A DNA stretch of 64,000 nt from Octopus sinensis. Lineage: Eukaryota. The stretch lies in assembly GCF_006345805.1 (NCBI RefSeq), contig NC_043026.1, forward strand, positions 2,356,001-2,420,000, in the 5' to 3' direction. The translations under genes and the position numbers were made by a program. This document shows positions 34,381 through 61,739 of the stretch, piece by piece. The stretch's first letter is position 1, and each line of letters opens with the position of its first letter. Under the pieces are notes generated by a model. The model saw only the letters and a program-made list of their open reading frames with translations. It searched no databases and had not been told where the DNA came from.

Positions 34381-37300
34381 ATACCTAGGAGAAGTCTACA
34401 TTGAACAAAGTAACGAAATTACTAAACGGAAACAACCTCGATGGAAACCAAAACTTGAAGAGAACATCAACAACGCGCACCGCCATCTTGGATGGTTAGC
34501 TACAACAATAAAATGTAAGGAGAAGAATGAGTTTACACCTCACCAACTCTACCTTTGACAAAAATTAAAGAAACTTTATGGCAACTCTTCACACCGAGCT
34601 CTTGAGGCAAAGCTAATCACTTTAAAACGTGAACTCAGGGCAATGAGCGAGAAACTCCGCTATCGCATGCGAATTTTTGAACGAGCCAGTTTTAATCGCA
34701 GGTTTGCTTCCAACCCACGAGCATTTTACAGAGAGATGAGGAAGGAAAACATTTCCATTAAGAAAGTTCCCTCCCAAGAAGACCTACAATCATTCTGGTA
34801 CAAAATCTGGAACAAAAAGAGGGATTTCAAACTGAATGTATCATGGTTCAATACAACCGAGAGAGAATATTATATCAACACCATCAGTAAAACATACAAC
34901 ATTGATGGAGATATCTTCGCTACAGCAGCAGGCAAACTGCACCTGGAAGGGACCTAATAGTTGGAGATCGGTACAAAAAGCTGACATTGTATAGAAACCA
35001 ATTGATAAATACGTTCAAAAGGACTCTGAAATGTCAGACTGATAGACTAAGTTGGTTTGCTACAGCATGGACAGATCTTGTTGCCAAAAATGAAATCAGT
35101 GAGATGGGAGGAAACTACAGGCCCATTGCTTGCTTAAATATTATGTACAAACTGTACACAGGTTGGCTCAACAAATTCCTCCTGGGCCAATGGGAGTCGA
35201 ACAACATTGTGACTGATGAACAGACTGGTGGGAAGAAGGGAGTGTGGGGCTTGGCCGAACACATTTTAATAAACAAAACTGTACTATCTGAGGTAAGAAA
35301 ACAACTTAGAAACCTTGTCCCAGTATGGCTTGACTATAAGAAGGTGTAGCGTACACACACGAGTGAAATTCCTTTCTCCTTTTATTATGCATTCGAACGT
35401 AGCAGGGAACAGCTAACCGTTGGCCGCTACTTGGACCCCGTTGTGTCCACTACTTTGATTGGTTGGTATTGGCGCAATTTGTCTCTTACTCTGTCGCTCC
35501 AATTAGCCGCGTATAACCAATCGGAGCCTCTAAATAAAATCACGTGAGACAGCTTGTTCTCAACCCAATTTTGATCCTACAGCTCCTTATAAAACCCCAA
35601 CTTCTCTTCGTCCAACAGCCTTACGGCAGCCTCAATCTTTGTCTCCACCATCATCTTCAACGTCGTCAACATCATCTCTACGAACACATCCCAACCAACA
35701 ACTCGCCCACATCCCGACACTCCACTGTTCCTGAATCACTTCGCCATGGATCAACAGCCAATATCCAACCTGCAACGACTCCTCTACCAATCACCCAGAC
35801 GGCAACATCACCTACGACCTGTAAACAGCTCAACATAATGGCTGCCACTTCTTCATACAGTATTTCAACTACCGTGTACAATTCACTACGAACTGCTATT
35901 CTCATTCTTGTGTCTATGAACTTCTCACTTCGATGCTTATACACTCTTTCACTGTCTTTTTCATTGCCATTCTTATATATTAACACGCGCACACATCTAT
36001 GCTTACACACGCACACACATACACTTTGTTCTCGTGACGGCCGGTCTATTATTTGGTGTAGATGATGTTCACACAGTCACACATTGTTATGTGTAGTTTG
36101 GGTTCTAATGGGATAGACAACCAAATGAAAACCATTGTTATTGTTTACGTGTTTATTGACTTCTCATGATACACGGACTCAACATTCAGCGTAGTGATAC
36201 ATAATATACTTTACACACAGTTGTACTGTTCACTAACAAAATAGTGCCAAGAGTGGGGATGTAGTTTGGCATACGTAAACACATAGATATGAATGTGTAA
36301 CACACATGCTTACATATGAATAAATCTTCTCCTAATCATTCTACCCGGTTGTGTCTCCCTTTTCTCTCAGGCATTTATATGTACTATTCATTTTAGATTT
36401 ATTGTATCGACCGTCTGATGTACTAAACAGCCATTCTCGTCACCTCGCATCACATGGTCCTTACAAAGGCATTCGACTCCATCCCTCATTCATGGCTGTT
36501 GAAGTACCTACATCTGGTAAAGGTACCCACTACCTTAATTGCTGCTATAGAGAGACTCACAAAGACATGGACGACAATTCTTACCCTCACAACTAAGAAC
36601 AGAATAATTGTTTCTGATAGAATAGGCATTTCAAAGGGGATATTCCCGGGAGATAGTTTTTCTGTACTTCTTTACATTTGGGCACTGAATCCATTATCGT
36701 TCCTACTACAGAAAACAAATGGTTCCATGATTGGATCTTCAACTGCTAGAAATATCAATGGAACTCTTGATTTCTTTGTAGACGACCTCAAGATTTCTGC
36801 TAAAAGTGTTAACAATGCCAAAAAACAGTTGGAATTAATAACGTTTTCATTTGATACAGGCATGGAATTTGGCCAAAAGAAATGTCCATATTTGGTTATA
36901 GAATGAGAAAAGTCAGTCCCCCAAACCCCAAACCTGTGCACCAACGGTCTCTCTATCTCCCCCATTCCACACAAAGGCATTGACGAAAATATATAATATG
37001 AAGGCACACTGAATGAAAATTGAGTGACCCGGGAATATTCCACCATACTTAGAAAAATACGGCAGTCGGAACTCTCCTCTTACAACAAAACATTATCCCA
37101 CAATGCATTTGCAGTACCAGTGCTGATCCCAACATTTGGGATACTTGAATGGTCTGTAGAGGAAATCTACTCCATAGATATCAAAACCCGCAAAATCCTG
37201 GCAACAACTGGGAACTTCCACAGAAACAATGATGTTGACAGGCTCTACCTAAGAAGAAATGAAGGCGGTAGAGGCCTGAGATAAGTGCAGACGGCCTTCG

Positions 37301-38602: not shown

Positions 38603-38608
38603 TTTATT
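38603..38608 (-). terminator. Polyadenylation signal of the CAP-ShKT gene
   Basis: AATAAA on the minus strand about 130 nt after the stop, followed by a GT/T-rich downstream tract (ttgttattgttgttg, about 38555-38575). Confidence 0.65.
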
Positions 38609-38738: not shown

Positions 38739-38851
38739 TCAGCAAGATCTACAGGATTTCCTGCAGTTCGTTCTCATATAATTTGGGTTGTTGTTGCATT
38801 CTCCCATATCTGCCCACATTTTGCAGTTCTTGTTAAGGTCAGGACAAGGAT
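38739..38851 (-). CDS. CAP-ShKT coding exon 6 (ShKT domain and stop)
   Basis: tttctttttaaag|AT CCT TGT...TGC TGA. CPDLNKNCKMWADMGECNNNPNYMRTNCRKSCRSC has the six-Cys ShKT pattern ending CxxxCxxC. Not in the ORF track. Confidence 0.93.
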
Positions 38852-39257
38852 CTTTAAAAAGAAATTAAAAGTCGTTTCACAGTACTATTAATAGAATCAC
38901 CAGGTTGAGTGAAATTCTTTTATTTCAATATTTCAATTCTTTCTAATGTATTTACTTAGACTTTTATTATTTCATACTCTCTGTGTGTGTGCGTGTGCGC
39001 GCGCAGTGGAAGTGGGATGGTTCATCTTTGCTCGCTTAGTATTTGGGTTTAATTTTTTTTTGATTTGGTTGAATCTTGGTTGCTTCTTTTTTTTGTTGGT
39101 TTGTTGGTCAATTAGTTTTAGTGTTTGGCAGAAAAAAGTCATTTTAAAATTGATTTTTTAACGTAAGCGTGCCCAAACAAGTCGAATGCTTACACAGAGC
39201 AGGTTTTACAACCACATCATCCAAACCGACCGGGTGAAACCGGGCTTAGCTGCTAGT

Positions 39258-39317
<60 letters not shown>

Positions 39318-42300
39318 ACAGTTAAAACAGTTTGGTATGGTTCTATATGACGTAAAGATTCGCAGGCCCCCTAACAGAAACCCGCCTCTTTCAGGCTTTG
39401 GATTGCCATTGCATGGAACAGTTAAATAATACATGCAGCTCTTTCTAAATGTGTTGAATGTCCTATACATCTATATACGCGCATGCGCATGAGCGCGCGT
39501 ACCCTGGATATGACTATAAACTGCTTCCGGAAGTAGGGCCTTGCTTCAGGAATTCTAAGGTTTTGAGGAGAGTGGAATCACCTGTTATCCATCATGTGAA
39601 GGCGCGTGGCTTAGTGGTTAGGGTAATGGACTCGCGATCGCAAGATTGTAGTTTCGATTCCTGGGTCGGGCGACACGTTGTATAGAACACTTTATGTCAC
39701 GTTGTTCCAGTTCACTCGGCAAAAATCAGTAATTCTGTAACAGACTGGTGTCTCGTCCACGCGGGGAATATACGCGCCATGGAAACCGGGAGACCGGCCC
39801 TTATCACTCGAGAAGGTAACTTTACCTTACTTTTGATAGCTACCATTGATCCCAGTTCTATCCCAAACCGCAGTGGAAGCATCTGTTAGGGTCTCAGGTA
39901 TGACTTAATTGGCCATACCTGAGACAGGTAGGGCTTGCCTACCTGTGCATGTAAAAGACGAATCTAGAAGACGCTACAGAAGAAGCAACAATGCAGTATA
40001 GAGTGCAGAGAGCAAGATGAGGCAAGCAAGACATGTTGGTCATCCACTGCATCCATCTCCATCCCCAGTCGTCTTGTCCTGGTCTTGCCACTGGACTGAA
40101 TATAATTACAGACAAGAGAGTGAGGTTGATGGTGGGCAACTTTTCTTCACTTCGAAGTCACTGTGCAAGTCATCGGTCCTCGTCTCCGCCACCGATCAAC
40201 ATGGAATATGTATATATAAAAGTGCACGACGCGTGTCTGACTTCGCCACGGTGTCACCGTTCACATAGCTTGAGATTGCCAGGCTGTCGTTTCGACGTTT
40301 CTGTGGGGAACTACAACAGGGATGAGATCGCCGACCTCGTCGGGTTATATATCTTGGATACCCCCAAGAAACACACTCACCCACACAGGTCGGCCCTTTC
40401 CAGGGACGACGGACAATGTAAACTCGTACAAGTTTACATTCTCCTAGAAGTAAGTTCTTATGAAAAAAAGAGGTTCTTCACTCCCAGTGGTTTATATGTT
40501 GGTTAAGCCATAGGTGGAAACCTAACTGGTTGGGAACCTCAGTGGCTAAGAACTGGTTCCACATTCTTCAAACACTTGGAACTCCCGTTGTGGGGCCCTA
40601 CTACTGGATTCAGGTTAAATTCATATCCGGGTTACTGAAGCCCTAATACTTTATCTTAAACATACAATCTTGCCCCACAAAATGATGCCTGATGTTATTT
40701 TAATACAAGGTAAAGAGGCGGAGGTGAGTGCGCGCGCGTCTTTGTTTTTGTGTCTGTCCCTCCTCGTCATTGCTTGGCAACCGGTGTTGGTGTGTTTACG
40801 CCCCTGTAACTTAGTGGTTCGGCAAAAAAGATCGATAGAAAAAGTACGAAGCTGAAAAATAAACAAATACTAGGATTGATTTGTTCGACGATAAAAACCC
40901 TTCAAGGTGGTACTGCAGCATGGCCGCAGTCCAATGACTGAAACAAGTAACAGAATACAATGTTAGCTCAAAATACTTTCACCTGATCTAATTCTGATAT
41001 ATGATGGCATCGACATAAACATGCCCAATACTTTATTAATAATATATAATCTCGGCAAATAGGAAATGCTACCCGTTTTGCCCATCAAAAGAGAGTATCT
41101 ACTTCAGCATTATATACACAGGGGAAGACTTACCCATGGCTGCTACGTCACCTGAATGTCCTCCTGTGAAAAGATAGAAGAGTTTCATATCATTTCTAGC
41201 ATAAATTATAAATTCACTTTTACGCACATGCGCACACGCGTTTCCTTCATTTTGTACCACGTGCAGATAAGTATAACCTGAAGACTGGACTGCAAGTGTC
41301 AATAAAACAATAGCAGCCCACTTGATAAGTTCACCCATGTTGATGCGCATGCGTGTGTGTTTGTTTCCCCATGCTTGAAACCGGTGCTGGTTTGCTTATG
41401 TTCTGGGAACTTATCAGTTAGACAAAAGAGAACAGATGGAATAAGAACGTGACTTTTAAAAAATTTATGCTGGCAACAATTTGTTCGACGAAAAACCCTT
41501 CAAGGTGTTGCTCCAGCATGGCTACTATCCAACGACTGAAAACAGTAAAAGGTAGAAGGTAAAGTATCTAGCGGCACTCGTCATCGAACCCACTCAGGGC
41601 ATGCTGGAGATCACCTTCTGATGAGCCAAGTGGCAGCATATCGTCTAGGAATACCAGCCGACCAATCCTACACTTGTGATATCACTTCCAAAACAGCCGC
41701 GCACGTCAATCCAGTTCATAAAATTTTGAAAATGGTGGTGATAAAAGGCACCCCTGCCGATGTCCAACGCCACATTGGAAGGTTTCTGCTTTGCGCCATT
41801 TATCCGAACACAAACATCTGTGCATTGATATAGGGATTTCACGGCAACCAGAAGTTTTCCATTAATCCCAGACTCCTGTAAAACCCTACACAGCATCGGA
41901 TCATATGTCTTTCAAGGTCTACAAAACAATGTACATCTCTTGGCTATATCCTTACGATTTAAGGTGGTGACCTGACAGAATCGTTAGCACGCCGCAAAAA
42001 ATGTTTAGCGGTATTTCGTTCATCTTCACGTCCTGAGATCAAATTCCACCGAGATCGAATTTACCTTTCAGCCTTTTGGGGTCGATGAAATAAGTACCAG
42101 ATGATCACAAGAGTCGATTAAATTGACTTACGCCCTTCTTCGGAATTGCTGGCCATGTGCTAAAATTTGAAATCTATTATTGCTTTCGTTATCTATAAAA
42201 GCCAACGCAATTTGTCTTTATGCACAATAATGTCTTCTGTTAAACATTTGCGGGTGTTGTTCGATTAATTCTTGTTGTTGGCTGCGTCTCGTGTTTCCGA

Positions 42301-45300
42301 GCTTGCAATCCAGTTCATTTTTCTGGGTGTTTGAACCGCAGATGGCTTCGCAATCCAAGAGTTGCATGAAACATTGTGGACAAGGGATAAAAGGGGCTGG
42401 TTTGGAAAGGAGAAGGCACTGCTTTCTCTCCTGTCTCTTGAGTTCAGCTCTCGCGACTCGGGCTTTCTCGAAGTCCGCAGAACCCGTTTTGATGGTGTGT
42501 CTCCAGGGGGGTCTGTTTGCCGAGATATCTTCTCAGTGTGCGGGGTCGATATTGGTGCTTTTTCAGGGTTGATTTGAGTTGGTCCTTGTACAGCCTCAAG
42601 GGGGCTCCACGAGGACGTTTTCCTTCAGTCAGTTCACCGTAGAGACAGGTCACGGACGTGACCTGACCATCGGAGGCGATGTTCAATGATCATTGAACAC
42701 TGAACATTGATTAATTCTACAAGTAGAACAAGAAACATATTTTCATTCATTAACTCAACCAGCTACCAGTGTAACCAACAACAACAACAATACCTACACA
42801 ACAATGTTTACATACATACATACATACGTACATACGTACATACGTACATACATACATACATGCATGCATACATACACACATAGTCTAAACATGCAACTAT
42901 ATGCATGAAAATACATACATAAAAACAAAGCATGCACCGACTCCAAATACCATACATATACACACATATATACACAAATACCCTATTGAGGTTGTTGAAA
43001 TTCCAATGAAGAGCCTTTGATCTGGGTTAGAAACAGGTTCTTTCCCATTTGGCAAAAAAATCTTGAAATAAAACTGAATAATGACATACATACATACATA
43101 CTTATATCGTGGCTGTGTGGTAAATAGCTTACTTACCAACCACTTGGTTCTGGGTTCAGTCCCATTGCGTGGCACCTTCGGCAAGTGTTTTCTACAAAAG
43201 CCTCGGGCTGACCAAAGCCTTGTGAGGTGATTTGGTTGATGGAAGCTGAAAGAAGCCCGTCGTATATATATTTGTATGTGTGTGTGTGTGTGTATGTGTG
43301 TGTGTCTGTATTTGTCCCCCCAACATCGCTTAACGACCGATGCTTGTGTGATTACATCCCCATAACTTAGCGGAGACCAATAGAATAAGTACTAAGCTTC
43401 CAAAGAATAAGTCCTGGGGTCGTTTTGCTCGACTGAAGGCGGTGCTCCAGCATGGTCGCAGTCAAATGGCTGAAACAAATAAAAGAATAAAAGAAAAGCT
43501 ATAAAATGTATCTTACCGTTACATAATCCCTTGGAACATCTACCAAAGTTCGCCGGACATTTGGAGCAGGCTCTGCCAGGTGTGTATATATTATTGCCAA
43601 TGTTTCCTCTAAAAATTACAAAGAGACAGAGTTAGATGTGGTTTTCTTTGAGTGGCTGCTGTTGTCAGTGCTTATGTATGAGTACCGTAAATCCTCGAGT
43701 ATAATCCGCATTTTTCCCCAAAAATTTAAGGGTCAAAATTCCTAGTGCGTACTATATACGAGGTTAAAAATGAAAGCAATGTCCGAGTCTCTATTTGCTG
43801 TCTGGCAATGTTTATTCAGACGTATTTTGTGATGCCGGGCTCGAAAATCCCTTAAGCTAAGCCTGAAAGCAATGAAGTCATAAAAGAATCATCCATAACT
43901 TGCAGTTAGCAACATTTATTAAACGTTATTACTGTTATTTCTTTATTTTCTGCAAACAAAATGCACGAAAAAGCTACACGTTTGCATTATGTTATATATA
44001 CAATAATAATAAAGGACGTTACCATATACACTTTTACAAACCAAGGACGTTATATAGACCTCCTTGACTCAAGTTAGAGAAGGGTGCGTATTATACACAA
44101 GGTTTAAGTTTTTCAAAGGTACAGTCCCCCACCCCATAAAAATCCCCTGCGTATAATACCCAAGGGCGGACTGTACTCGAGGATTTACGGTATATATATA
44201 TTCAAAAATGTTCGTATATATACAAATAGATGGACAGACGAACGGACAAACAGGGCGGACGGATGGACAGACGCACGGACAGGCAGGTGGGCGGAAAGGC
44301 TATCAGATAGATGAATGGACAGACGGACGGACAGTGAGACAGACAGACAGACAGGCAAACTGACGGGCGGATAGACAAGTAAACAGGTGAATGAAGGGGC
44401 GTGTGTGTGTGTGTGTGATACGGAGACAGATGGACATGTGCGCATGCGCGAGCACACACTCATACACATGCACACACACACATACTAACACATACACACA
44501 TACACATAGACAGGCACACGCACATACACAGGTCGTCAACCAGCCAAACAGACAGACGGACAGACGGAAACAGACAAAGAAAGAAAGAAAAAGAATGAAA
44601 GGAAGGAAGAAAGAAAGAAAGAAGGAAAGAAAGAAAGAAAGAAAGAATGAAAGGAAGGAAGAAAGAAAGAAAGAAAATGAAAGGAAGAAAGAAAGAAAGA
44701 AGGAAAGAAAGAAAGAAAGAAAGAAAAAGAATGAAAGGAAGGAAGAAAGAAAGAAAGAAAAAAAATGAAAGGAAGGAAGAAAGAAAGAGAGAAGGAAAGA
44801 CAGAAAGAAAGAAAGAAAGAAAGACAGAAAGAAAGAAAGAAAGAAAGATAGAAAGAAAGAATGAATGAAAGAGAGAGAGAGAGAGAGAGAGAGAAAGAAA
44901 GAAGGAAATTTTGAGAGCAACATCCTGAGTCCAGATGTAAGAGTAAATGTCGGTACCAACCTGGGATAGTAGAAGCAGACCAAGTATTTAGCATTGCTCA
45001 CTGAACGGCCAAAAGCCTGTAAACTGGGACAATTAATAGCTGAACAGCCGACGTGTGTTGTGTTGGCCCAGACCATCTGTGGACGTAGAAAAGGAAAAGA
45101 TATCATTCATAGTGGTGGATGTTAGTGAGTGAGGAGAGGTCTTTCTTCTATACTTTCGCTCTTGTATTGAGTCCAGCTTTTGGACTGCAACCGTTCTGTG
45201 CTATGTCGTGGCATGGCCGTTTAAATCGGTCACATCGAACTCAGTACCAATATCTGTCTGGTATCTTATGTTATCAATCTCTGTTTGTCGAATCAGTAAG

Positions 45301-48300
45301 TCATGCAAGCAAAAATAGCAGTGTGTTTTTAGGCCAGTATAGAATTGAACACAAACATGGAGACGCATAGACATGTGCGTGCACACACACACACACACAC
45401 ATACACACACATACGCACATACACAGACACACGCGCACTTACACATATACACACTGATACACATACGTATTTGCACATATATAAATACTTGCATACGCTC
45501 ACATACAAACATACACACATACACATGCATACATATACATGCATACGTACGCATGCACACATACACGCACATATTCTCATACACATACATGCACACGTAC
45601 ACACATACTGGCGCGCACACAAGTACACTCATGCACATACGTACACATGCATAAACACACACTAAATTTCCCCAAAGGCACTGCTTGCCCGAACAACACT
45701 TATAATGATTCCTACAGTTACGCATATTACTACGTTTATTATCCAGCGAAGTTCAGAAATGTATTATTTAATGTATAATGTTCTGCACAAAGACCTGATA
45801 AAATATACTACTATATAGGTCAGAATTCAATTCCCGATGAAATAATCACATGTAGTCTTTCAATAAAAAACGAAAACTACTTAACACCTCATTAACTTAT
45901 GGATAGGACATTAATTAATATTATTCATTGTCCGTTATATGTACTGCACTTCTTTATAAATGAGTTGAGGTAGTTGTAATTTTTGTTGCATAGAGGCATT
46001 AGAAATCTGAAAGTGAAAGTCCAAATTAATTGATAAACGTAAGAAATTATTGATCTCTTGCTTAATGAGGAGAGTGCTTGGGCTCTCTGCGATAGTTAAA
46101 ACTTGTCAAAGGACGGACAGACTTATTACAGTCAACGACCATCCAATACTGTGTATACAAACATTGTCCTGCTATTTCTCACGGACAGCGCTAGTTCTTG
46201 CAACAATCATTGACAAACAGTTGACCTTGGTGCAGGCACAACCGATTCAGTCAGCAGAGAACCAAGACAAGGAAAATTTGAATAGAATCGGTAGAGCATC
46301 GCAATATATGCTAAGCGATATTTCTTCTTAGTCAAATCTCATCCAGATCATATTTGCCTTCCATCCCGACCAGATCGATAAAATGTCAGTCAAATACTGG
46401 CAGTTGATGTAATCGACTGCCCCCACTAAAAGTGCCAAGCCTTGCAACGTATTGACCATGGAGTGGTTTTTCGTTCCATTTCTCTTTAAGTATGTTTTGT
46501 AGATTTCTTTCTGTTGTTGTTTTTTTGTATGTTTTACCATTTCTATTGTGTTGTTATTTAAATTTATTGTTTCAATGTAATCGATTTCTGCTTTGTATTT
46601 CATCGCTTCTTCGTGAGTAGAAAAGACTTTCTTCTGTCTGTGTTTCACATTTCTTTATTACATTCAGAAATCTTTCATTCTTTCTTTCTAAATATTTGTC
46701 CAGTTCAGCTGTTGTTATCTGCAGAAGTTTTCTATTCGTGTCAGGCCACGCCCTCCTTCCGGTGTATTATGTCAATGTCTGTTTTGGGATGGTGACTTCA
46801 GTATGCTGTTAGTAATTCTCTGGTTTCTCCAATGTTTTTTTTCAATTTACTTGGTTCCAGTTTATGATATTGAAACTGCAGTTTATGGCTGGTAAGGCTA
46901 GCGTAGTTATATCAATTATTTCTAGCGCAGAGTTCAGTTTTTAATATTAGTCTAACTAAAGGCGGCGAGGTGGCAGAATCATTAGCATGCTGGGTAAAAT
47001 GCGCCATTTCTTCCGACTTTACGTCCTGAGTTCAAATTCCACCATTTGCCATTTATCCTTTCAGGCGCGATAGAATAAGTACCAGTTGAACATTGACTTC
47101 GATGTAATCGACTCATTCTCTCTCCCTAAAATTACTGCCTTTGTAGCAAAATTTGAAATCGTCATCATCATCATCATCATCATTATTATTATTATTACCT
47201 TCGCCTTAGCAAAGGCAGAGGTATTGTTTTCAGTCGTGTTTGTTCGTTTGTCCGGGGACAAGGTGTCTCAGGAACCGCTTTATAGATTAGGATGAAACTT
47301 TCAGGGAAGTTTGGCGTCGTGATTGGCACGAACTGATTAAATTTTGGGATCGATCCGGTACCGACGAGGATTCTGGATTATTTGTTATATTTACTTTACA
47401 AGAAGTATTACGATCTTACGTTGACTTTCAAGTCTTTCTCTTATTAACTCCCTTGAAAGTATGCTCATGGTTTCCACGTAAGTTATGGCGGCGTTGCTGT
47501 TCCCAAAGTTTTATTTTCGTTTCTCTTATTATTAATTTTACTCGCGTCTCTATCTCACTAGAAACTGATGGATAAAGAAATCAAACTACATAAAGAAATG
47601 GCATCAAACCCCTTCAGAAATGAAATAACATTAGCATATCCAGGAACAATGATAAATTTAATTTATCCTCGGCAATTTTTAGTTTTACCAATTTTGAATA
47701 TATCGCTCCTGTTTAAAACCTCTTACCTACTTGACAATTGCATTTCTAGTTCTGCCATGAAGGAAGCTTTACTTCTTGGACTCACGTTTTTGTGCGCAAC
47801 GATGTTCTTGAACCTCCGTTAACAGCACCAAATGCAGGTCCTTTCCGTTTTCTTTCAGGCACGGATAAATTTTTCACTGTAGACCTTAATGGTCGTAAAG
47901 AAACTATATCGGTGGATAGACTAAATAAGGCCTTCATAGAGAAAACTGTCCCCTGTTCCCATTGCAGACGATACACACACACACAGCATTACAAACACGG
48001 TCTACCCACCCACCTTCACATTCCATGACTACCACTGGGATCGATCCGGTACCGGACAAGGATTCTGGATTATTTTTTCCGTTCTCTTTTTACTTAATTT
48101 TCGAGAGCGGTCGGGTTCATTTTTAGTATTCTCCGGCAAATCGTTGAGAGGACGTTGGTGCTGCCTTGACGGAGGTTTGCGTTGAGTGCTCTTGTTATTA
48201 TTATTATTATTAACGCGGTGAGCAGACGAAATCGTTAGCATGCCGGACAAACTGCTTAGCGGCGTTTTGACCGTCTTTATGTCCTGAATTCAAATTTCGC

Positions 48301-48810
48301 CGCCGATGTCGGTTTTGCTTTTCATCCTTTCGAGGTCCAGCACTGGGATTGAGGTAATCGACTAGTACCCCCCCCCACAGCATTTTAGGCCTATAGAATA
48401 AAGAATTATTTTTATTAAAGGGGTGAGAGGCGTTTGCGCATCGGACAAAACACTTTGCTTTTCATCTTTAAAGGGTCGATAAAATAAATGAGTCAAATAC
48501 TGAGGTCGGTGTCCCCAACTTGCTGCCAACCCTCAAAATTACTGGCCTTGAGTCAAAGTTAAAAAAGAAGTACAACATTTACCTGAGTATAGTGACAACT
48601 GCTGCCACACGAAGAAGCGCTTCGGTAGAAATCTCTCTTTTCATTGAACCAACCTTGCATTTCAGACTGGATGAGGTCCTTAATAGTGCCTGCGTTACTG
48701 TCAAAGGCAAGGTTCTCACCTCGGCCCTTCCTTTGATGATCAAACATACACTTATGGGCCCATTTATTGGCTTCTGTTGCTAGTTGTTTGCTCCAAGCCT
48801 GTAGATATAC

Positions 48811-48897
<87 letters not shown>

Positions 48898-48905
48898 TAG
48901 ATAGG

Positions 48906-48946
<41 letters not shown>

Positions 48947-50875
48947 GACAGACAGACAGACAGACAGACAGACAGATAAGCGGGTGGGTTTGGATGGCTA
49001 TACGGACAAGTAGTAGTTAGGTAGGTAGAACGTTGGTAATTTCTATTGACATTGAAGACTGAAAAGTTTCCGGTTTCAAATCCTGCCATTCCACAGAATG
49101 TAAGACAAGCGACCAAGTTGTGGCTGTTGGTCTTATAGTATGAAGGAAGAGGGAAAATGCCTTTTCCTTTTTACAGAGAGCAGAGAAATATTGCAGGTGT
49201 TTGTGGTTTTCGAAGCTCTCAGCAGTGGATGGAGGAAGATGTCTTCTCCTTTCAGAGGAGGCCAGTAAAATATGAAGGTGTTGGTTGTCTTCCAGGAAAT
49301 AAGCGAGACGTGAGACATGTGGAAGTCTGTACATAAAAGTGAGTGTAATTTAATACTTTTTTCAATTCTGCATTTATGTGGTCTCTAAGCTGCTGGAAAT
49401 AGTTACCAAATCTCTCTCAAATCAAAGCAAAGATGTACTAAATTAGTGATTCCCAGCGTGGGGCACACATACAGAGCTGGTGAGGCCAAGGAAAATTGTG
49501 GTGGAGTGGGGGATCTAAATTTTTAAAATTCTTTTTCTTATTTCAGTCATTTGACTGTGGCTATGCTGGAGCACCGCTTTGACGGCTTTTTAGTCAAACA
49601 AACCGACCCTAGGATTTATTCTTTCAGCTAAGTAGTTATTGTATCGGTTTCTTTTGCTGAATTGCTAAGTTACGAGGACGCAAACGCACCAACAACTGTT
49701 GTCAAGTGGTGATGGAGGGATAAACACAGGCACAGAGGCACACACACACACACACGACGAGCTTCTTTCAGTTTCCGTCTACCAAATCCACTTACAAGGC
49801 TTTGGTCGACCCGAGGCTTTGGTAGAAGACACTTGCCCAAGGTTCCACGCAGTGGTTCAGAATCCGGACCCATTTGGTTGGGAAACAAGCTTCTTACCAC
49901 CACAGCAAACATTCTACACCAACCACTGATGGGGGTGGGGGATACATTGTTCTGGAAAGTTGTAAGGGGGTCAGCAGGAAAATAGGTTGGGAACTACTGC
50001 ACTAGATAATATCATTTTCCCAACTGCATGGTTCCAGGTTCAGTCCCACTGCGTGGCACCTTGGGCAAGTGTCTTCTGCTATAGACTCAGACCAACCAAA
50101 GCCTTGTGAGTGGATTTGTCAAATGGAAACTAAAAGAAGCCCGTTGTGTGTGTGTGTTTCTTCCCACCCTTCCGTTTTGACAACCGGTGTTAGTTTGTCT
50201 ACGTCCCCATTAACTTAAGGGTTCAGCAAAAGAGACTGTTAGAATGAGTACCAGGCTTTTAAAAAAGAGTAATGATTCGATATGTTCGACTTAAAGATGG
50301 TGCTCCAGCATGGTCGCAATCAAATAACTGAAACGTGTAAAAAAAGACATCCATAAAAAGATTGGATGGTCACGACCGAAATGCCTTTGATCATAGGTCT
50401 GTATAGTCAGGGTTGGCCAGCGCCGCCTTCAGACTGGGCAGCTGCCTAGGGGCCTCACGGATTTAGGGGCCCCTGATTCTGATTTATGTATGATGTGGCT
50501 TGCTATTAGCGAATAAATACTAGAGGCCCCAGTGCTTTGATTTACCCGGGGCCTATAAAGGTGCTAAAACAGTGTTGGAGTTGACCTGGGGTTAAACATC
50601 AACAACAACCACCACCCTCCGCCACCACCAAAATAAGAATCTGACCACCAGCCCCTCCACCACTATGCCAAAAACCAGAGCTATAACGACAACAACAACA
50701 TAAATAATAAGAACAACGGAGATCCTACCAGTTTAATCATATCGGAGGCTCCTTCTTTTGCCCTGAGATCATTATGGAATTGAAGGACGAATTGGCGCAA
50801 GTGTTCGGAGTCAAGGAGGTCAGCAGATATGAGGGGCGACACGGCCAAAAGCAGGACACACAAACGCAAATACAT
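38739..50875 (-). CDS. Secreted CAP/SCP-domain + ShKT protein (CRISP-like), 6 coding exons, 237 aa
   Basis: Manual splicing gives MYLRLCVLLLAVSPLISADLLDSEHLRQFVLQFHNDLRAKEGASDMIKL/AWSKQLATEANKWAHKCMFDHQRKGRGENLAFDSNAGTIKDLIQSEMQGWFNEKRDFYRSASSCGSSCHYTQ/MVWANTTHVGCSAINCPSLQAFGRSVSNAKYLVCFYYPR/GNIGNNIYTPGRACSKCPANFGRCSKGLCNG/GHSGDVAAMD/PCPDLNKNCKMWADMGECNNNPNYMRTNCRKSCRSC*. Exon lengths 147+216+116+92+30+113=714 nt, intron phases 0,0,2,1,1, all GT-AG, no internal stop. CAP motifs HNxLR, GENL, WxxE, HYTQxVW and VCxYxPxGN are present. Confidence 0.93.
39229..39257 (+). mobile_element. Helitron 3' terminus
   Basis: Hairpin CCGG-GTGAAA-CCGG (39230-39243) followed about 10 nt later by CTAG|T (39253-39257). 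Confidence 0.55.
40270..40415 (+). mobile_element. RT core fragment of a third PLE lineage
   Basis: FDVSVGNYNRDEIADLVGLYIL...ALSRDDG resembles the FDVTMGSxDGAExCELVGLYxL...GLYRDDG RT type. Confidence 0.6.
41134..41163 (-). CDS. CAP-ShKT coding exon 5, 30-nt phase 1-1 microexon (GHSGDVAAM linker)
   Basis: ctatcttttcacag|GAGGACATTCAGGTGACGTAGCAGCCATGG|gtaagt: pyrimidine-rich acceptor, consensus donor, frame-preserving. Confidence 0.7.
41690..41940 (-). mobile_element. LINE RT fragment (RTE-like)
   Basis: LCRVLQESGINGKLLVAVKSLYQCTDVCVRING. Confidence 0.7.
42250..42690 (-). mobile_element. RTE (BovB-like) LINE 3' end
   Basis: CLYGELTEGKRPRGAPLRLYKDQLKSTLKK. Confidence 0.75.
43517..43608 (-). 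CDS. CAP-ShKT coding exon 4 (end of CAP domain and Cys-rich hinge)
   Basis: ctttgtaatttttag|A GGA AAC...TGT AAC G|gtaaga, 92 nt, GNIGNNIYTPGRACSKCPANFGRCSKGLCN. It completes the YxPxGN motif. Not in the ORF track. Confidence 0.92.
43685..44190. mobile_element. Tc1/mariner-superfamily (Tc2-like) non-autonomous element
   Basis: TA|CCGTAAATCCTCGAGTATAATCCGC ... GCGGACTGTACTCGAGGATTTACGG|TA: ~25-bp TIRs, TA TSD, 506 bp. It lies in the intron between coding exons 3 and 4. Confidence 0.85.
44560..44905. repeat. (GAAA)n/(GA)n microsatellite
   Basis: Direct inspection. Confidence 0.97.
44961..45076 (-). CDS. CAP-ShKT coding exon 3
   Basis: ttttctacgtccacag|ATGGTCTGG...TATCCCAG|gttggt, 116 nt, MVWANTTHVGC...YLVCFYYP. 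Confidence 0.93.
46400..46900 (-). mobile_element. Decayed R4-type non-LTR fragment
   Basis: gacattgacataatacaccggaaggagggcgtggcctgacacgaatagaaaac corresponds to DIDxxxxRKEG(G)RGLxRIEN with a frameshift. Confidence 0.45.
47192..48196 (+). mobile_element. Helentron-associated (HINE/DINE-like) element enclosing a Gypsy integrase-tail fragment
   Basis: 5' ttattaccttcgcc and 3' gacggaggt sub-terminal inverted repeat with a short hairpin. gggatcgatccggtaccg is repeated at 47346 and 48037. 47780-47945 encodes HVFVRNDVLEPPLTAPNAGPFRFLSGTDKFFTVDLNGRKETISVDRLNKA. Confidence 0.6.
48583..48798 (-). CDS. CAP-ShKT coding exon 2
   Basis: tatctacag|GCT...ACTCAG|gtaaat, 216 nt, AWSKQLA...GENLA...WFNEK...CHYTQ. 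Confidence 0.95.
48805..48980. repeat. (GATA)n/(GACA)n microsatellite abutting the exon 2 acceptor
   Basis: Direct inspection. Confidence 0.97.
50729..50875 (-). CDS. CAP-ShKT coding exon 1 (signal peptide and start of CAP domain)
   Basis: Acceptor tctcgtttcag|CCAAAC-ATG (exon starts 50881, so an upstream 5'UTR exon is implied). Hydrophobic leader MYLRLCVLLLAVSPLISA, then HNDLRAKEGASDMIKL. Donor CTG|gtagga. Confidence 0.93.
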
Positions 50876-52278
50876 GTTTGGCTGAAACGAGATAAGCATC
50901 AATTTAGATTATTCATCGGAGTAATTGTCAATTAAGATGGCCAGCTGAAAGCATTATTAACATGCCGGGCTAAATGTTTAGCGGTAGCTGGCAGAGTGGT
51001 TAGCACGCCGGGCGAAATGCGTAGTCGTATTTCGTCTGTCATTAAGTTCTGAGTTCAAATTCCGCCGAGGTCGACTTTGCCTTTCATCAATTCGGGGTCG
51101 ATTATATAAGTGCCAGTTGCGCACTGGGGTCGATGTAATCGACTTAATACGTTTGTTTGTCCCCTCTGTGTTTGGCCCCTTGTGGGTAGTTAAGAAATAG
51201 GTATTTCGTCTGTCTTTATGTTCTGAGTTCAAAGTCACCAAGGTCGACTTAGCCATTGCTGTTTGTTGTTTGTTTTGTTTGTTGAGCGAAGCGGTCTTCG
51301 TTCCAGAGTGGGAGAAGTCCGAAACGTGGTCCTTTGCTATTCGTAAGACCCGCAGAAGAGACAGCAGGTCAACCCCCGACACCGATGGATGAATGTGCAT
51401 CCAGGCTCAGCGGTTGCGTAGGAAGACGGGGACAAGAAACAGGAAGAAAGGGTGAGAGAAAGTTGGGGTGAAAGAGTACAACAGGGGCCGCCACCACCCC
51501 CTGCTAAAGACTCGTGGAGCTTTAGGGGTTTTCGCTCAATAAACACACACAACGCCCGGTATGGGAATCGAAACCGCGATCCTCCGACCGCGAGTCCGCT
51601 GCCCTAACCACTGGGCCATTGCGCCTCCTTGCGTTTGCTGTGGAAAAGGAGGAGGGATCATCATGAGTTGCCGGTTGCCTGGTCTCTTGTGCCAATGGCA
51701 AACATGCTCCAATCATAGAAATTAATCCATGCTCAGTCTGGAGCCTTCCATAGGTTTCCTGACTCAGTTGAACGCAACACGTGATTGCAAGTGAAGCTTG
51801 AAAAGTGTCTTCACTGCCCGACTGCATTCTGCAAACTAATCAAGCGTAACAAGCAGCGTTTAGCAGGCAATCTTCAAAGCACTCTTACAGCAATGTTCAA
51901 TGGGGAATAAGAAAACTTGGCTTCTTTCCATGTCTAACACGTAGAGTAATGATATGCAAAAGTGAAGAAAGAAATAATCTAACACAGTTATAACTGTCTC
52001 TCCTGAAACAAAAATCTCAAAACTTATGCAATGCAACTCGTAAATAACCAGAAAAGAGGGTATACATATGCAAGTCCCCATAACTTGGCGGTTCAGCAAA
52101 AGATCCGATAGAATGAGTACCAGGCTTTAAAGAAATAAATATTGGGGTTGATTCATTCGACTAAAAATTCTTCAAGGTGGTGCCCCAGCATGGCCACAGT
52201 CTAATGGCTGACACAAGTAAAAGAAAAAAGATGTGTGATGTGTGATGTGTGTGTGTGTGTGTGTGTATACATGCATAC

Positions 52279-52357: not shown

Positions 52358-52411
<54 letters not shown>

Positions 52412-52732
52412 ATATATATAATGTATGTATATACATATATGTCAATTGTTCAAACCGTTCACATGGAGAAAGGTGTTCGCCTCCATTTTGGAAAACCAGC
52501 GTAGTGTTGTGCTCTCGATATATATATATATTATATATATATATATATACTACAAAATTAGAAAATGGAGAAACATACTTAAATCAATAAAACATCAACC
52601 ATCAGATGATACCCAATCAATACTTTATTACACCATTACATAAAAGTAAAGGCAATATACAAAATATATTGTAAATATACATAGACAAGGGGATAGAAAT
52701 ATGAAATATAAAATATATGTAATTATATCATA

Positions 52733-52842
52733 TCTGACAGCTGTTTCGGCGGTAAGGGCAATCATGCCTCATTTAACCTATAAGCCATAAAGGCAGGTAT
52801 AAATGAGGCATTAACAAGGATGCCCCACAGCCTCTTCAGAGA
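52733..52842 (-). ncRNA. Type I hammerhead motif with extended stem II (copy 1)
   Basis: Minus strand TCT-CTGAAGA-GGC...GCC-GAAAC-AGCT-GTC^AGA. Stem II contains ggggca/tgccct and a perfect 12-bp atgcctcattta/taaatgaggcat helix. Stem I is only 3 bp. Confidence 0.65.
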
Positions 52843-53689
52843 ATTTAATTTATTATAATTGTGAAAAAAATTTTTTCCCATATACATATAAATATAAAAA
52901 TGTAAAATATATATACTCATTGATACAATAATGCAAGATAAACAAAACAAAATAAAACAATATATATATCAGTATATATATTAATAGGCACAGTTATTCC
53001 ACATATTAGGCTAATAGTTCTAAAAACTAACATATAAGAAAATATATGCACACTACTATTTAAATTAAAATCAGACCTATACCTGAAAAATAATAAAAAC
53101 CATAGTTCAGTTCATAAAATTATAAACTTTAAAAGTCAATAAAATTACTATTAATACTAATAATAATAATAATAATAATAGATACAGTTATGTCTGCACC
53201 AAGTACATCCTTCCGAAATCGATATAACTATGAGTTTATATATACTGTAACTAATCTAGTATGTATATAACGCATTAACAGAATTATTTGAATGTAGAAC
53301 ATATCTTGTAACAGTTGTTCTGTCTGTCAGTCTGTCTGTCTCTCTTCCCTCTCCCTCTCCCTTTCTCTCTCTCTCCCCCTCTCTCTCTCTCTCTCTCTGT
53401 CTCCGAGTTCGAATCCCACAGAGCGCTTAACTTTACCTTTCATCCCTATCACTCGTTATAATAAAATACCAATGTGCGGTCGGTGGGATTGTGAGAAGGC
53501 TCAGATGAAATGTTGTTCTGTGAATCAGGGCTGGCATCGAGAATACATTTATTGGCAGGGTTACTTAGCTTGCTTTTAAGTTGGCAAAGGCAGTCAGCTT
53601 TCTGCTCCCTAATCGTACATATCTGTCTGTCTGTCTGTCTATGTATCTATGGCCGCAGTCAAATGACTGAAACTAATAAAAAAAAAGGA

Positions 53690-53738
<49 letters not shown>

Positions 53739-53830
53739 GTATGTATATACATATATGTCAATTGTTCAAACCGTTCACATGGAGAAAGGTGTTCGCCTCC
53801 ATTTTGGAAAACCAGCGTAGTGTTGTGCTC

Positions 53831-53897
<67 letters not shown>

Positions 53898-54079
53898 TAC
53901 AAAATTAGAAAATGGAGAAACATACTTAAATCAATAAAACATCAACCATCAGATGATACCCAATCAATACTTTATTACACCATTACATAAAAGTAAAGGC
54001 AATATACAAAATATATTGTAAATATACATAGACAAGGGGATAGAAATATGAAATATAAAATATATGTAATTATATCATA

Positions 54080-55038: not shown

Positions 55039-55105
<67 letters not shown>

Positions 55106-60981: not shown

Positions 60982-61739
60982 TATATAGGTGCAGGAGTGG
61001 CTGTGTGGTAAGTAACTTCCTTACCAACCACATGGTTCTGGGTTCAGTCCCACTGTGTGACACCTTGGGCAAGTGTCTTCTACTATAGCCTCGGCTCGAC
61101 CAAAGCCTTGTGAGTGGGTTTGGTAGATGGAAACTGAAAGAAGCCTGTCGTATATATGTATATATATATGTGTGTGTGTGTCTTTGTTTGTCCCCCAACA
61201 TCGCTTGAGAACCGATGCTGGTGTGTTTATGTCCCCGTAACTTAGCGGTTCGGCAAAAGAGACCGATAGAGTAAGTACTAGGCTTACAAAGAATAAGTCC
61301 TGGGGTCGATTTGCTCGATTAAAGGCAGTGCTCCAGCATGGCTGCAGTCAAACGGCTGAAACAAGTAAAAGAGTAAAAGAGTAAAAGAGAGAGTATATAT
61401 GTATGCTTCTGATGTATGTATGTATGCAATATCTGTGTGTGTTTATGTATAGATGTGTGTGTGTTTATGTGCGTGAATTGTGAGAATCTGCAAAAGATGG
61501 CAAAGCCATGAGGGAGAGAAGAGGATAACTCTGTGCTACTCACCTTCAACAAAGTTTCTTTGGAATGTCGCTGAGTGGAGAGAATCTCTGATTGCAGCAA
61601 CGGTTCAACACAGCTGGCTTTATATAGAGAGCTAAGGTACACTCACCCACACCCAACTACATGCACAGACACACCCATTACCCATTGCACATATTACAGA
61701 TGTGTGTGTGTGTGTCATATAGTGTGTGAGTGTGTGTGC

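What the first reader, a model, noticed from the sequence alone, without database searches (positions are those of the whole stretch)
38739..50881. Hidden complete CAP + ShKT (CRISP-like) secreted protein, a possible venom or gland effector
Seen: six exons join in frame to a 237-aa protein with a signal peptide, CAP domain, four-Cys hinge and a terminal six-Cys ShKT domain. The hinge and ShKT exons are absent from the ORF track. The four residues matching the CAP His-Glu-Glu-His tetrad appear intact (FDH, GEN, WFNE, CHYTQ). Established: vertebrate CRISPs combine CAP, hinge and an ShK-like ion-channel-regulatory domain, and CAP proteins are reported among cephalopod posterior salivary gland transcripts. 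Inference: this is a CRISP-type architecture with a canonical ShKT module, and a candidate toxin, immune or reproductive effector.
Basis: partly seen in the sequence, partly recalled or inferred. Interest (0 to 1): 0.75.

Follow-up and report, generated by a model that had tools for sequence, protein, structure and literature searches.

The report
Octopus salivary-gland CAP-ShKT gene, already annotated
The six-exon gene is real and correctly reconstructed, but it is an already annotated Octopus sinensis gene from a described mollusc family (CAP-ShK), and its close relatives have already been reported from octopus venom glands.

Summary
Six minus-strand exons with AG/GT at every junction give a 237-aa protein identical to Octopus sinensis RefSeq XP_029653443.1. 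The window is 100% identical to CM016888.1. Pfam finds CAP (5.7e-18) and ShK (6.1e-9). The His70/Glu77/Glu102/His118 tetrad, a four-Cys hinge and a six-Cys ShKT are all present.

The CAP+hinge part looks most like GLIPR1. Snake CRISPs align end to end, but the C-terminus matches Pfam ShK, not Pfam Crisp. So this is a CRISP-like architecture and not a vertebrate-type CRISP.

It belongs to the molluscan CAP-ShK family described by Gerdol et al. 2019. Apparent orthologues exist in Sepia, Argonauta, Hapalochlaena and O. vulgaris.

The venom-gland idea has support. A 157-aa partial protein 78% identical to this one is very probably the Hapalochlaena gland "CAP protein". The O. vulgaris posterior-salivary-gland proteome holds a CAP group whose leading protein matches the O. 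vulgaris orthologue's 211-aa isoform. That isoform lacks ShKT: it reads through the donor of the 30-nt fifth coding exon.

The only mildly new point is this possible switching of the ShKT module by alternative 3' ends. Verdict: correct, ordinary, already known.

The parts
61619..61626 (-). TATA box (TATATAAA) of the putative promoter
   Evidence: Read directly from the sequence. It lies about 30 nt upstream of the inferred start of the 5' non-coding exon. Its function is inferred.
61544..61595 (-). Non-coding 5' exon. The 5' end is approximate; the 3' end is at a GT donor (61543-61542).
   Evidence: tblastn of the N-terminal extension of the O. vulgaris 253-aa isoform (CAI9743039) matches 61573-61544 at 9/10 residues. 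The GTGAGT donor follows. No in-frame ATG lies downstream of the upstream stop in O. sinensis, so the exon is untranslated here.
50729..50881 (-). Coding exon 1. The acceptor boundary is at 50881 and the ATG at 50875. It encodes the signal peptide and the start of the CAP domain (residues 1-49).
   Evidence: It is identical to XP_029653443.1.
48583..48798 (-). Coding exon 2. CAP domain residues 50-121, holding H70, E77, E102, H118 and the C113/C117 pair.
44961..45076 (-). Coding exon 3. End of the CAP domain (C132, C137, C155). It ends in phase 2.
43517..43608 (-). Coding exon 4. Four-Cys hinge (C174, C177, C184, C189). It ends in phase 1.
   Evidence: The hinge aligns with those of GLIPR1, stecrisp and triflin.
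41134..41163 (-). Coding exon 5. A 30-nt, phase 1-1 microexon encoding a Gly-rich linker (residues about 191-200).
   Evidence: It is present in the RefSeq and O. vulgaris models. The linker is disordered in the model, with pLDDT below 50 at residues 193-200. Homologues have variable Gly-rich linkers at this point.
41099..41133 (-). Read-through of the exon-5 donor. It adds an 11-residue tail plus a stop, giving the 211-aa isoform without ShKT.
   Evidence: The window translation is identical to the tail of O. vulgaris CAI9743041. The same stretch is conserved in the second copy, L002.
41032..41037 (-). AATAAA, 96 nt past exon 5. Candidate poly(A) signal for the short isoform.
   Evidence: It is conserved in L002. 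Its use is inferred.
38739..38851 (-). Coding exon 6. The complete ShKT domain (six Cys) plus the stop codon. It begins in phase 1.
   Evidence: The nearest solved ShKT is 2mcr (BmK1), E 1.3e-8.
38603..38608 (-). AATAAA, 130 nt past the stop codon. Candidate poly(A) signal for the long isoform.
   Evidence: Its use is inferred.

Best explanation
This is the Octopus sinensis gene for XP_029653443.1. [quoted passage not shown] It is a single-ShKT member of the molluscan CAP-ShK family and the apparent orthologue of the 'CAP' protein reported from octopod posterior salivary (venom) glands.

Shown:
- The exact exon structure.
- Identity to the annotated protein.
- The CAP + hinge + linker + ShKT layout.
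- An intact His-Glu-Glu-His tetrad.
- Sixteen Cys in the mature chain (6 CAP, 4 hinge, 6 ShKT).
- Conservation through cephalopods and into bivalves and gastropods.

Inferred:
- The signal peptide is cleaved after Ala18, and the roughly 24-kDa protein is secreted by the salivary glands.
- The CAP cleft, with its tetrad, is the constant working part. It probably binds a divalent cation and a lipid or protein ligand, as in GLIPR1, natrin and Na-ASP-2.
- The ShKT module, held on a flexible linker, is an optional binding module for an ion channel or another surface target. It is included or dropped by the choice between splicing exon 5 to exon 6 and ending the transcript just after exon 5.
- The pore-plugging Lys of the classical ShK Lys-Tyr dyad is Asn here (N224-Y225). 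If a channel is the target, binding is unlikely to work exactly as in ShK.
For: Identity and annotation:
- The gene model has canonical splice sites.
- It has 0 differences to P0008/XP_029653443.1, and the window is 100% identical to CM016888.1.

Domains and structure:
- Pfam finds CAP and ShK.
- By sequence, GLIPR1 scores 2e-22 and snake CRISPs about 1e-17, aligned over residues 26-234.
- The AlphaFold2 model has mean pLDDT 85.9 with a disordered linker.
- Foldseek puts GLIPR1 first (TM 0.79, rmsd 2.5 A over 190 columns) and aligns snake CRISPs over about 230 columns.
- The tetrad is conserved in 31-32 of 32 homologues, while the dyad-Lys position is variable (N 8, K 8, A 5 and others). BmK1's K-Y aligns with N-Y here.

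Family and orthologues:
- The CAP+ShK architecture occurs throughout Mollusca, including CreCAP-ShK1.
- The family is described, and inferred to be ancestral to molluscs, in PMC6409789.
- A cephalopod clade has 95% bootstrap support and follows the species tree.
- The Sepia esculenta orthologue occurs as an uninterrupted CAP-linker-ShKT CDS in seven RNA-seq assemblies.

Gland link:
- O. vulgaris PSG protein group 654 is a CAP with signal peptide 'Y', 10 peptides and PEP 2.9e-53.
- Its best hit is ACJ22636.1 from H. maculosa: 79.6% over 157 aa, coverage 0.7441 (= 157/211), 263.1 bits.
- My comparison of the O. vulgaris 211-aa isoform with the 157-aa partial P0003 gives 79.0%, 157 aa and 263 bits.
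Against: - No O. sinensis expression data could be examined. The gland link rests on sister species and on a fingerprint match (length, identity, bit score), not on an accession-level match. The equation P0003 = ACJ22636.1 is inferred.
- The gland protein on record appears to lack ShKT.
- The same 230-240-aa architecture occurs in filter-feeding bivalves at 42-45% identity. The oyster type I gene is reported as barely expressed. The gene is therefore old and is not a venom invention.
- There is no lineage-specific expansion beyond a near-identical second copy and one old paralogue.
- No biochemical function has been shown for any molluscan CAP-ShK protein.
- Signal-peptide cleavage was not computed here.
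Confidence: 0.85

Rival explanations
1. It is a general extracellular CAP protein whose main job lies outside envenomation, for example in immunity, matrix or mucus biology, or reproduction. Its presence in the salivary gland would then be incidental or part of ordinary secretory-epithelium biology.
For: - The ortholog group is conserved with the same size and layout in non-predatory bivalves and gastropods.
- Gerdol et al. infer a pre-molluscan-radiation origin and report barely detectable expression of the oyster type I gene.
- The Sepia esculenta orthologue is assembled full-length from whole larvae and juveniles.
- The cephalopod tree follows the species tree, with no venom-style gene expansion.
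- The CDS of the two O. sinensis copies differs less (0.7%) than their introns do (about 2%), as expected under ordinary purifying selection.
Against: - Its relatives were found in venom-gland cDNA (H. maculosa) and in the venom-gland proteome (O. vulgaris, 10 peptides).
- CAP proteins are among the most abundant PSG protein families.
- In Cumia reticulata, type I CAP-ShK genes are expressed more than 100-fold higher in the salivary gland.
Confidence: 0.3
2. The working product is the short CAP+hinge protein. On this reading the ShKT exon is rarely or never joined to it in octopus, and the 237-aa form is mostly a product of gene prediction.
For: - The leading PSG protein of group 654 is 211 aa by its coverage figure (157/0.7441). 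That matches the O. vulgaris isoform that reads through the exon-5 donor.
- An AATAAA lies 96 nt past exon 5, and it is conserved in the second copy.
- No octopus RNA-derived contig encoding the 237-aa form is on record in the collection.
Against: - The ShKT exon is intact, in the right phase (1) and has a good acceptor.
- It is 100% identical between the two O. sinensis copies, whereas the introns differ by about 2%.
- It is conserved in O. bimaculoides with 2 of 38 residues changed.
- Sepia mRNAs carry CAP, linker and ShKT in one uninterrupted CDS.
- Argonauta, oysters, scallops and gastropods all have the same C-terminal module.
- Two independent annotations, RefSeq and the O. vulgaris genome annotation, give the 237-aa form.
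Confidence: 0.15
3. It is a true orthologue of vertebrate CRISPs. On this reading it blocks ion channels through a CRISP-type cysteine-rich domain, as the snake-venom CRISPs do.
For: - The linear layout is the same, and the mature chain has the same total of 16 Cys (3+2+3 possible disulfides).
- HMMER aligns residues 26-234 to stecrisp, triflin and natrin, with the hinge and five of the six C-terminal Cys in register.
- Foldseek aligns about 230 columns to the same structures.
Against: - Pfam Crisp (PF08562) is not matched even at E 10. A squamate CRISP used as control matches it at 2e-19 and does not match ShK.
- The best sequence and fold matches for CAP+hinge are GLIPR1, and the best vertebrate hits of the profile search are PI16 and GLIPR1.
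- The C113/C117 pair before HYTQ is shared with GLIPR1 and not with the snake CRISPs.
- A disordered 10-12-residue linker separates the hinge from ShKT, instead of a compact cysteine-rich domain.
- Gerdol et al. favour independent recruitment of ShKT modules by CAP proteins.
- My rough tree does not resolve the backbone.
Confidence: 0.05

Closest known systems
[quoted passage not shown]
   Same: Identical protein of 237 aa with the same CDS span. The window is that locus on CM016888.1.
   Different: Nothing differs in sequence. The RefSeq name is misleading, because Pfam finds only CAP and ShK and no LCCL domain.
Cephalopod posterior-salivary-gland 'CAP' proteins: H. maculosa partial CAP protein (ACJ22636.1, Fry et al. 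2009) and O. vulgaris PSG protein group 654 (Almeida et al. 2020; shared with Fingerhut et al. 2018)
   Same: - A 157-aa octopod partial (P0003) is 78-80% identical to this protein and groups with it at 100% bootstrap.
- The PSG leading protein has the length, identity and bit score expected of the O. vulgaris orthologue's 211-aa isoform.
   Different: - The published H. maculosa entry is partial and covers the CAP domain only.
- The PSG form seems to lack ShKT.
- The accession-level equivalence is inferred, not looked up.
Molluscan CAP-ShK type I proteins (CreCAP-ShK1-3 of Cumia/Colubraria reticulata; Gerdol et al. 2019, PMC6409789)
   Same: - Signal peptide, CAP domain and canonical ShKT domain(s) recognised by HMMER.
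- CreCAP-ShK1 is 36-41% identical over nearly the full length.
- The paper places the H. maculosa partial protein in the type I clade.
   Different: - One ShKT here, against two or three in Cumia.
- My rough tree does not resolve the position relative to CreCAP-ShK1.
- The Cumia genes are salivary-gland specific, whereas expression of this gene was not measured.
Vertebrate CRISPs (stecrisp 1rc9, triflin 1wvr, natrin 1xx5/3mz8, pseudechetoxin 2dda)
   Same: The order CAP, four-Cys hinge, six-Cys ShK-like module; 16 Cys in all; an intact tetrad; alignable end to end.
   Different: - The C-terminus matches Pfam ShK, not Pfam Crisp.
- There is a flexible linker between hinge and module.
- The CAP-domain cysteine pattern and the best hits are GLIPR1/PI16-like.
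Human GLIPR1 (3q2r/3q2u)
   Same: Best match for CAP+hinge by sequence (2e-22) and by fold (TM 0.79, rmsd 2.5 A). It shares the Cys pair before HYTQ and the hinge pattern.
   Different: In the solved construct GLIPR1 ends after the hinge and has no ShKT. I recall from memory that the native protein continues into a membrane anchor, but this was not tested here.
ShKT domains of metalloproteases: BmK1 of Brugia malayi (2mcr) and human MMP23 (2k72)
   Same: The nearest solved ShKT domains (E 1.3e-8 and 0.2), with all six Cys and the aromatic-Met motif in register.
   Different: BmK1 has Lys-Tyr at the dyad position and this protein has Asn-Tyr. Those domains are attached to a protease, not to a CAP domain.

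Membership tests
CAP superfamily (PF00188; CRISP / antigen 5 / PR-1) | Match to the CAP/SCP domain model above the curated threshold | tested here: met
   PF00188 scores 66.3 bits against a cut-off of 21.1, E 5.7e-18, residues 31-155.
CAP superfamily (PF00188; CRISP / antigen 5 / PR-1) | Conserved His-Glu-Glu-His tetrad of the CAP cleft | tested here: met
   H70, E77, E102 and H118 align with the equivalent residues of stecrisp and triflin. They are present in 31-32 of 32 homologues.
CAP superfamily (PF00188; CRISP / antigen 5 / PR-1) | Alpha-beta-alpha sandwich fold | tested here: met
   The AlphaFold2 model has pLDDT 85.9. The top 50 Foldseek matches listed (all E <= 1e-4) are all CAP structures. 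GLIPR1 gives TM 0.79 at rmsd 2.5 A.
CAP superfamily (PF00188; CRISP / antigen 5 / PR-1) | Secretion signal | tested here: inconclusive
   No signal-peptide predictor was available. The N-terminus has Arg4, a 12-residue hydrophobic core and an I-S-A motif before Asp19 (read from the sequence). pLDDT is low at residues 1-20. Almeida et al. mark the matching O. vulgaris protein 'signal peptide Y', and residues 1-92 are identical between the two species.
Molluscan CAP-ShK type I (Gerdol et al. 2019) | A CAP domain followed only by canonical ShKT domain(s) detectable with HMMER at E < 1e-3, with no EGF-like or irregular Cys arrays | tested here: met
   ShK scores E 6.1e-9 on the whole protein and 7.3e-10 on the C-terminal 77 aa. 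No other family is matched there. One ShKT pattern is found.
Molluscan CAP-ShK type I (Gerdol et al. 2019) | Placement in the type I clade, with CreCAP-ShK1-3 and the H. maculosa partial protein | tested here: inconclusive
   The protein groups at 100% bootstrap with the 157-aa octopod partial that is probably the H. maculosa protein. The backbone of my neighbour-joining tree has support of 9% or less, and CreCAP-ShK1 is not resolved. No type II reference sequences were available, and the paper's alignment file is not held.
Vertebrate-type CRISP | C-terminal cysteine-rich domain matching Pfam Crisp (PF08562) | tested here: not met
   There is no PF08562 match at E up to 10. A squamate CRISP control (P0122) matches it at 2.2e-19.
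Vertebrate-type CRISP | Four-Cys hinge directly after the CAP domain | tested here: met
   C174, C177, C184 and C189 align with the hinge Cys of stecrisp, triflin and GLIPR1.
Vertebrate-type CRISP | Hinge and ICR packed as one compact domain | tested here: not met
   A linker encoded by its own 30-nt exon separates them and has pLDDT below 50 at residues 193-200. Global superposition on CRISPs gives rmsd 12-14 A, although about 230 columns align.
ShK-type K+ channel blockers | Six-Cys ShKT fold | tested here: met
   PF01549 is matched. Block-mean pLDDT for residues 201-237 is 81-96, with three short helices. The 2mcr domain aligns at E 1.3e-8.
ShK-type K+ channel blockers | Lys-Tyr functional dyad | tested here: not met
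   The dyad position reads Asn224-Tyr225, where BmK1 has Lys-Tyr. The Lys position is variable among 32 homologues, while the aromatic residue is conserved. Gerdol et al. note that the dyad is neither necessary nor sufficient for activity.
ShK-type K+ channel blockers | Measured block of a channel | not testable with these tools
   This needs electrophysiology with recombinant protein.

The most novel reading that the evidence does not exclude
The gene may use alternative 3'-end formation to decide whether its ShKT module is attached. One choice is an intronic poly(A) site just after the 30-nt linker microexon. The other is splicing to the ShKT exon. On this reading the venom gland secretes mainly the ShKT-less CAP+hinge protein, and the ShKT-bearing form is made in other tissues or conditions, or the reverse. 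That would be a regulated on/off switch for a channel-binding module in a venom-gland protein.
Probability: 0.25. Interest if true: 0.35.

Novelty: already known. Interest (0 to 1): 0.15.

Why it matters
The finding shows that the first-stage reading can rebuild a six-exon gene, including a 30-nt microexon, exactly as the public annotation has it.

Biologically it adds little. The gene is annotated, its family is named (CAP-ShK), and its relatives are already listed among octopus venom-gland proteins.

Three points may be useful to specialists.
- The RefSeq name (CRISPLD2) is misleading.
- The O. bimaculoides orthologue is annotated only as fragments.
- The gland isoform on record seems to lack the ShKT module. 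This bears on whether cephalopod 'CAP' venom proteins could act on ion channels at all.

Tried and rejected
- **Second copy inside the window:** tblastn found none. The near-identical copy is 138 kb away, outside the window.
- **Exact look-ups of the O. vulgaris 237-aa and 211-aa isoforms** in the assembly collection returned nothing. I therefore obtained no octopus RNA contig.
- **Paper searches for the protein accessions** found nothing.
- **The alignment supplement of Gerdol et al.** is not held, so their type I/II tree could not be reproduced.
- **Four further paper look-ups** gave nothing specific to this gene. They covered two 2026 preprints, the Hapalochlaena genome paper and the Paroctopus digueti gland paper.
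- **Neighbour-joining tree of the CAP+hinge region:** the cephalopod clade is well supported, but the backbone is unresolved. I do not use it to decide between type I, type II and CRISP affinities.
- **Whole-model superposition on snake CRISPs** is uninformative about domain packing because the linker is disordered.
- **The search of 1.84 billion representatives** (9,604 hits) only confirmed that CAP+hinge is widespread and that ShKT is a modular addition.
- **Pseudogene or chance ORF:** rejected. Both copies are intact with all splice sites.

Full report
**What is in the sequence**

On the minus strand, six exons join with canonical AG acceptors and GT donors. They are 50875-50729, 48798-48583, 45076-44961, 43608-43517, 41163-41134 and 38851-38739. 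The joined CDS is 714 nt and encodes 237 aa.

The ATG is at 50875.

Pfam finds CAP at residues 31-155 (E 5.7e-18, 66 bits against a cut-off of 21). It finds ShK at 202-237 (E 6.1e-9, 37 bits against 21). This is far beyond chance.

The domains follow the exons:

| Coding exon | Content |
|---|---|
| 1-3 | Signal peptide and CAP domain |
| 4 | Four-Cys hinge |
| 5 | 30-nt, phase 1-1 microexon encoding a Gly-rich linker |
| 6 | Whole six-Cys ShKT, starting in phase 1 |

The mature chain has 16 Cys: 6 in CAP, 4 in the hinge and 6 in ShKT (read from the sequence).

**Where it comes from, and whether it was hidden**

The protein is identical to Octopus sinensis RefSeq XP_029653443.1. Window 28739-60875 is 100% identical to CM016888.1 positions 2384739-2416875. 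The gene is therefore publicly annotated. It is 'hidden' only from a plain ORF list.

[quoted passage not shown] That name reflects a best hit and not the domain content, since there is no LCCL domain.

O. vulgaris has three annotated products with consecutive accessions that read as isoforms of one gene:
- a 237-aa form with 4 differences from this protein;
- a 253-aa form with an N-terminal extension from an upstream exon;
- a 211-aa form that reads through the donor of coding exon 5 and ends after 11 more residues, without ShKT.

The window encodes exactly the same read-through tail. An AATAAA lies 96 nt past exon 5.

The upstream exon is also present in the window. It ends at 61544 with a GTGAGT donor and lies about 30 nt downstream of a TATATAAA at 61626-61619. 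It has no in-frame ATG in O. sinensis, so here it is a 5' UTR exon. The transcription unit thus spans roughly 38.6-61.6 kb.

**Structure and residues**

The tetrad H70/E77/E102/H118 aligns with the corresponding residues of stecrisp and triflin. It is conserved in 31-32 of 32 CAP-ShK homologues.

By sequence, the best solved relative is human GLIPR1 (2e-22, CAP+hinge). Next come the snake-venom CRISPs stecrisp, triflin and natrin (about 1e-17 to 1e-15). These align from residue 26 to 234, with the hinge Cys and five of the six C-terminal Cys in register.

An AlphaFold2 model built on 32 homologues has mean pLDDT 85.9. The only disordered internal stretch is the linker, residues 193-200. Foldseek again puts GLIPR1 first (TM 0.79, rmsd 2.5 A). 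It aligns about 230 columns to snake CRISPs, but with rmsd 12-14 A, because the position of the C-terminal module is not fixed.

The Cys pair just before HYTQ (C113, C117) is shared with GLIPR1 and not with the snake CRISPs.

The C-terminal 77 residues match Pfam ShK (7e-10) and do not match Pfam Crisp at all. A squamate CRISP used as control does the opposite.

The nearest solved ShKT is the BmK1 domain of a Brugia malayi metalloprotease (1.3e-8). Where BmK1 has Lys-Tyr at the classical dyad position, this protein has Asn224-Tyr225. Among 32 homologues the Lys position is free (N, K, A, P and others), while the aromatic residue and the following Met are fixed.

**Family**

A profile search finds the CAP+ShK combination throughout Mollusca:
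- oysters, scallops, mussels and clams, under names such as 'peptidase inhibitor 15-A';
- abalone, limpets, sea slugs and pond snails;
- CreCAP-ShK1 of the vampire snail.

Gerdol et al. 2019 (PMC6409789) named these CAP-ShK proteins and split them into two types. Type I has canonical ShKT only. Type II has irregular Cys arrays, and includes Conus Tex31 and Mr30. They inferred that both types predate the molluscan radiation. They placed a partial Hapalochlaena maculosa gland protein (Fry et al. 2009) in type I. They also noted that no molluscan member has a demonstrated function.

By architecture this protein is type I. My rough neighbour-joining tree supports a cephalopod clade (95%) that follows the species tree: Sepia, Argonauta, the octopod partial, then Octopus. 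Its backbone is unresolved, so I do not claim clade membership from it.

**The venom-gland question**

P0003 is a 157-aa partial protein with an old UniParc identifier. It is 78-80% identical to the Octopus proteins.

In the O. vulgaris posterior-salivary-gland proteome of Almeida et al. 2020 (PMC7693380), protein group 654 has these properties:
- it is classed as CAP and marked 'signal peptide Y';
- it has 10 peptides, 5 of them unique, and PEP 2.9e-53;
- it is listed as shared with Fingerhut et al. 2018;

A coverage of 157/0.7441 means a query of 211 aa. The O. vulgaris 211-aa isoform compared with P0003 gives 79.0% over 157 aa and 263 bits.

I take this as strong, though indirect, evidence for three things. 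P0003 is the H. maculosa gland protein. Group 654 is the orthologue of the window's gene. The gland transcript that led the group is the ShKT-less isoform.

It is not supported for the ShKT module specifically.

Evidence that the ShKT exon is nevertheless a real part of this gene:
- It is intact and in phase.
- It is 100% identical between the two O. sinensis copies, whose introns differ by about 2%.
- It is conserved in O. bimaculoides, with 2 of 38 residues changed.
- The Sepia esculenta orthologue occurs as one uninterrupted CAP-linker-ShKT CDS in seven RNA-seq assemblies. Two of those runs are from larvae or juveniles.

**How it most likely works**

What is shown: a secreted-type, disulfide-rich, two-module protein with an intact CAP cleft.

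What is inferred:
- Cleavage occurs after Ala18, followed by secretion from the salivary glands.
- The CAP cleft binds a divalent cation and a lipid or protein ligand, by analogy with GLIPR1, natrin and Na-ASP-2. All of these were crystallised with zinc or cobalt, according to the entry titles.
- ShKT, on its flexible tether, acts as an optional binding module.

Because the dyad Lys is absent and not conserved, a ShK-like pore plug is not expected. Gerdol et al. stress that the dyad is neither necessary nor sufficient for activity.

The main rival is that the protein has an ordinary, non-venom extracellular role. I give that about 0.3, for three reasons. The same architecture is conserved in filter feeders. 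The oyster gene is barely expressed. There is no venom-style expansion.

**Context**

- A second copy, XP_029653452.1, has 2 aa and 5 nt differences in the CDS. It lies 138 kb away on the same strand and is 97.6-98.8% identical through introns and flanks. It is either a very recent duplication or an uncollapsed haplotype.
- A divergent paralogue, XP_029653603.1, is 48% identical. It lies near 1.98 Mb on the same chromosome, has Gln in place of Glu77 and has a degenerate ShKT.
- No other cellular gene turned up among the window's ORFs of 130 aa or more. The matches there are retroelement fragments, alongside microsatellites. I did not search for other multi-exon genes.

**Verdict**

The thing itself is already annotated, belongs to a named family, and has relatives already listed in octopus venom-gland catalogues. 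Interest is low. The only lead worth following is the apparent switching of the ShKT module by alternative 3' ends.

Noticed in passing
L002 (CM016888.1 2246117-2278457, reversed), compared with window 28739-60875: A second, intact copy of the gene (XP_029653452.1; Q93R and N101D; 5 nt differences in 714) lies about 138 kb away on the same strand. It is 97.6-98.8% identical through introns and flanks. It is either a very recent segmental duplication or an uncollapsed haplotype. O. vulgaris appears to have one locus with three isoforms.
   Followed up: partly
L003 (CM016888.1 1976519-2021424): An older paralogue, XP_029653603.1 (227 aa, 48% identical), lies on the same chromosome and its gene span is 39 kb. 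Its tetrad Glu77 is replaced by Gln (GQN instead of GEN). Its C-terminal six-Cys module falls below the Pfam ShK cut-off (E 0.0036, 18.3 bits against 20.9).
   Followed up: partly
window 41099-41133 and 41032-41037 (minus strand): Reading through the donor of the 30-nt microexon gives an 11-residue tail and a stop, identical to the tail of the O. vulgaris 211-aa isoform. An AATAAA follows 96 nt past the exon. Both features are conserved in the second copy. This suggests an intronic polyadenylation isoform without ShKT.
   Followed up: partly
window 61544-61626 (minus strand): A TATATAAA box is followed by a short non-coding first exon with a GTGAGT donor, 10.7 kb upstream of the ATG. In O. vulgaris the same exon carries an ATG that yields an annotated 253-aa isoform. 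O. sinensis has no ATG there.
   Followed up: yes
window 52379-55105: A tandem duplication of about 1.35-1.4 kb (97% identity between the units) lies inside intron 1 of this copy. The second gene copy (L002) has a single unit, which accounts for most of the length difference of its first intron.
   Followed up: partly
window 44576-44908, 33434-34377 and 61742-62405: Three long microsatellites. (AAAG)n starts about 50 nt after the donor of coding exon 3 and creates a spurious 267-aa ORF that runs on from the exon. (ATAC)n covers about 0.9 kb. (AT)n covers about 0.66 kb just upstream of the putative promoter.
   Followed up: no
window 22000-26500, 36454-36906, 19418-19843 and 29095-29940: Retroelement remains. 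A 470-aa reverse-transcriptase ORF (RVT_1, 7.8e-8) sits in a G+C-rich block (GC 0.48-0.55) with strong negative GC skew (G far below C, skew down to -0.54). There is another RVT_1 fragment and a zf-RVT fragment. A 281-aa ORF at 29095-29940 has no significant family match. No other cellular gene was seen among the ORFs of 130 aa or more.
   Followed up: partly
O. bimaculoides proteins P0092, P0099 and P0010 (not in the window): The O. bimaculoides orthologue is annotated only as fragments. LOC106878583 is given as 88 and 124 aa with part of exon 2 skipped or an intron read through. A separate 38-aa entry (A0A0L8G1P4) holds only the ShKT.
   Followed up: no
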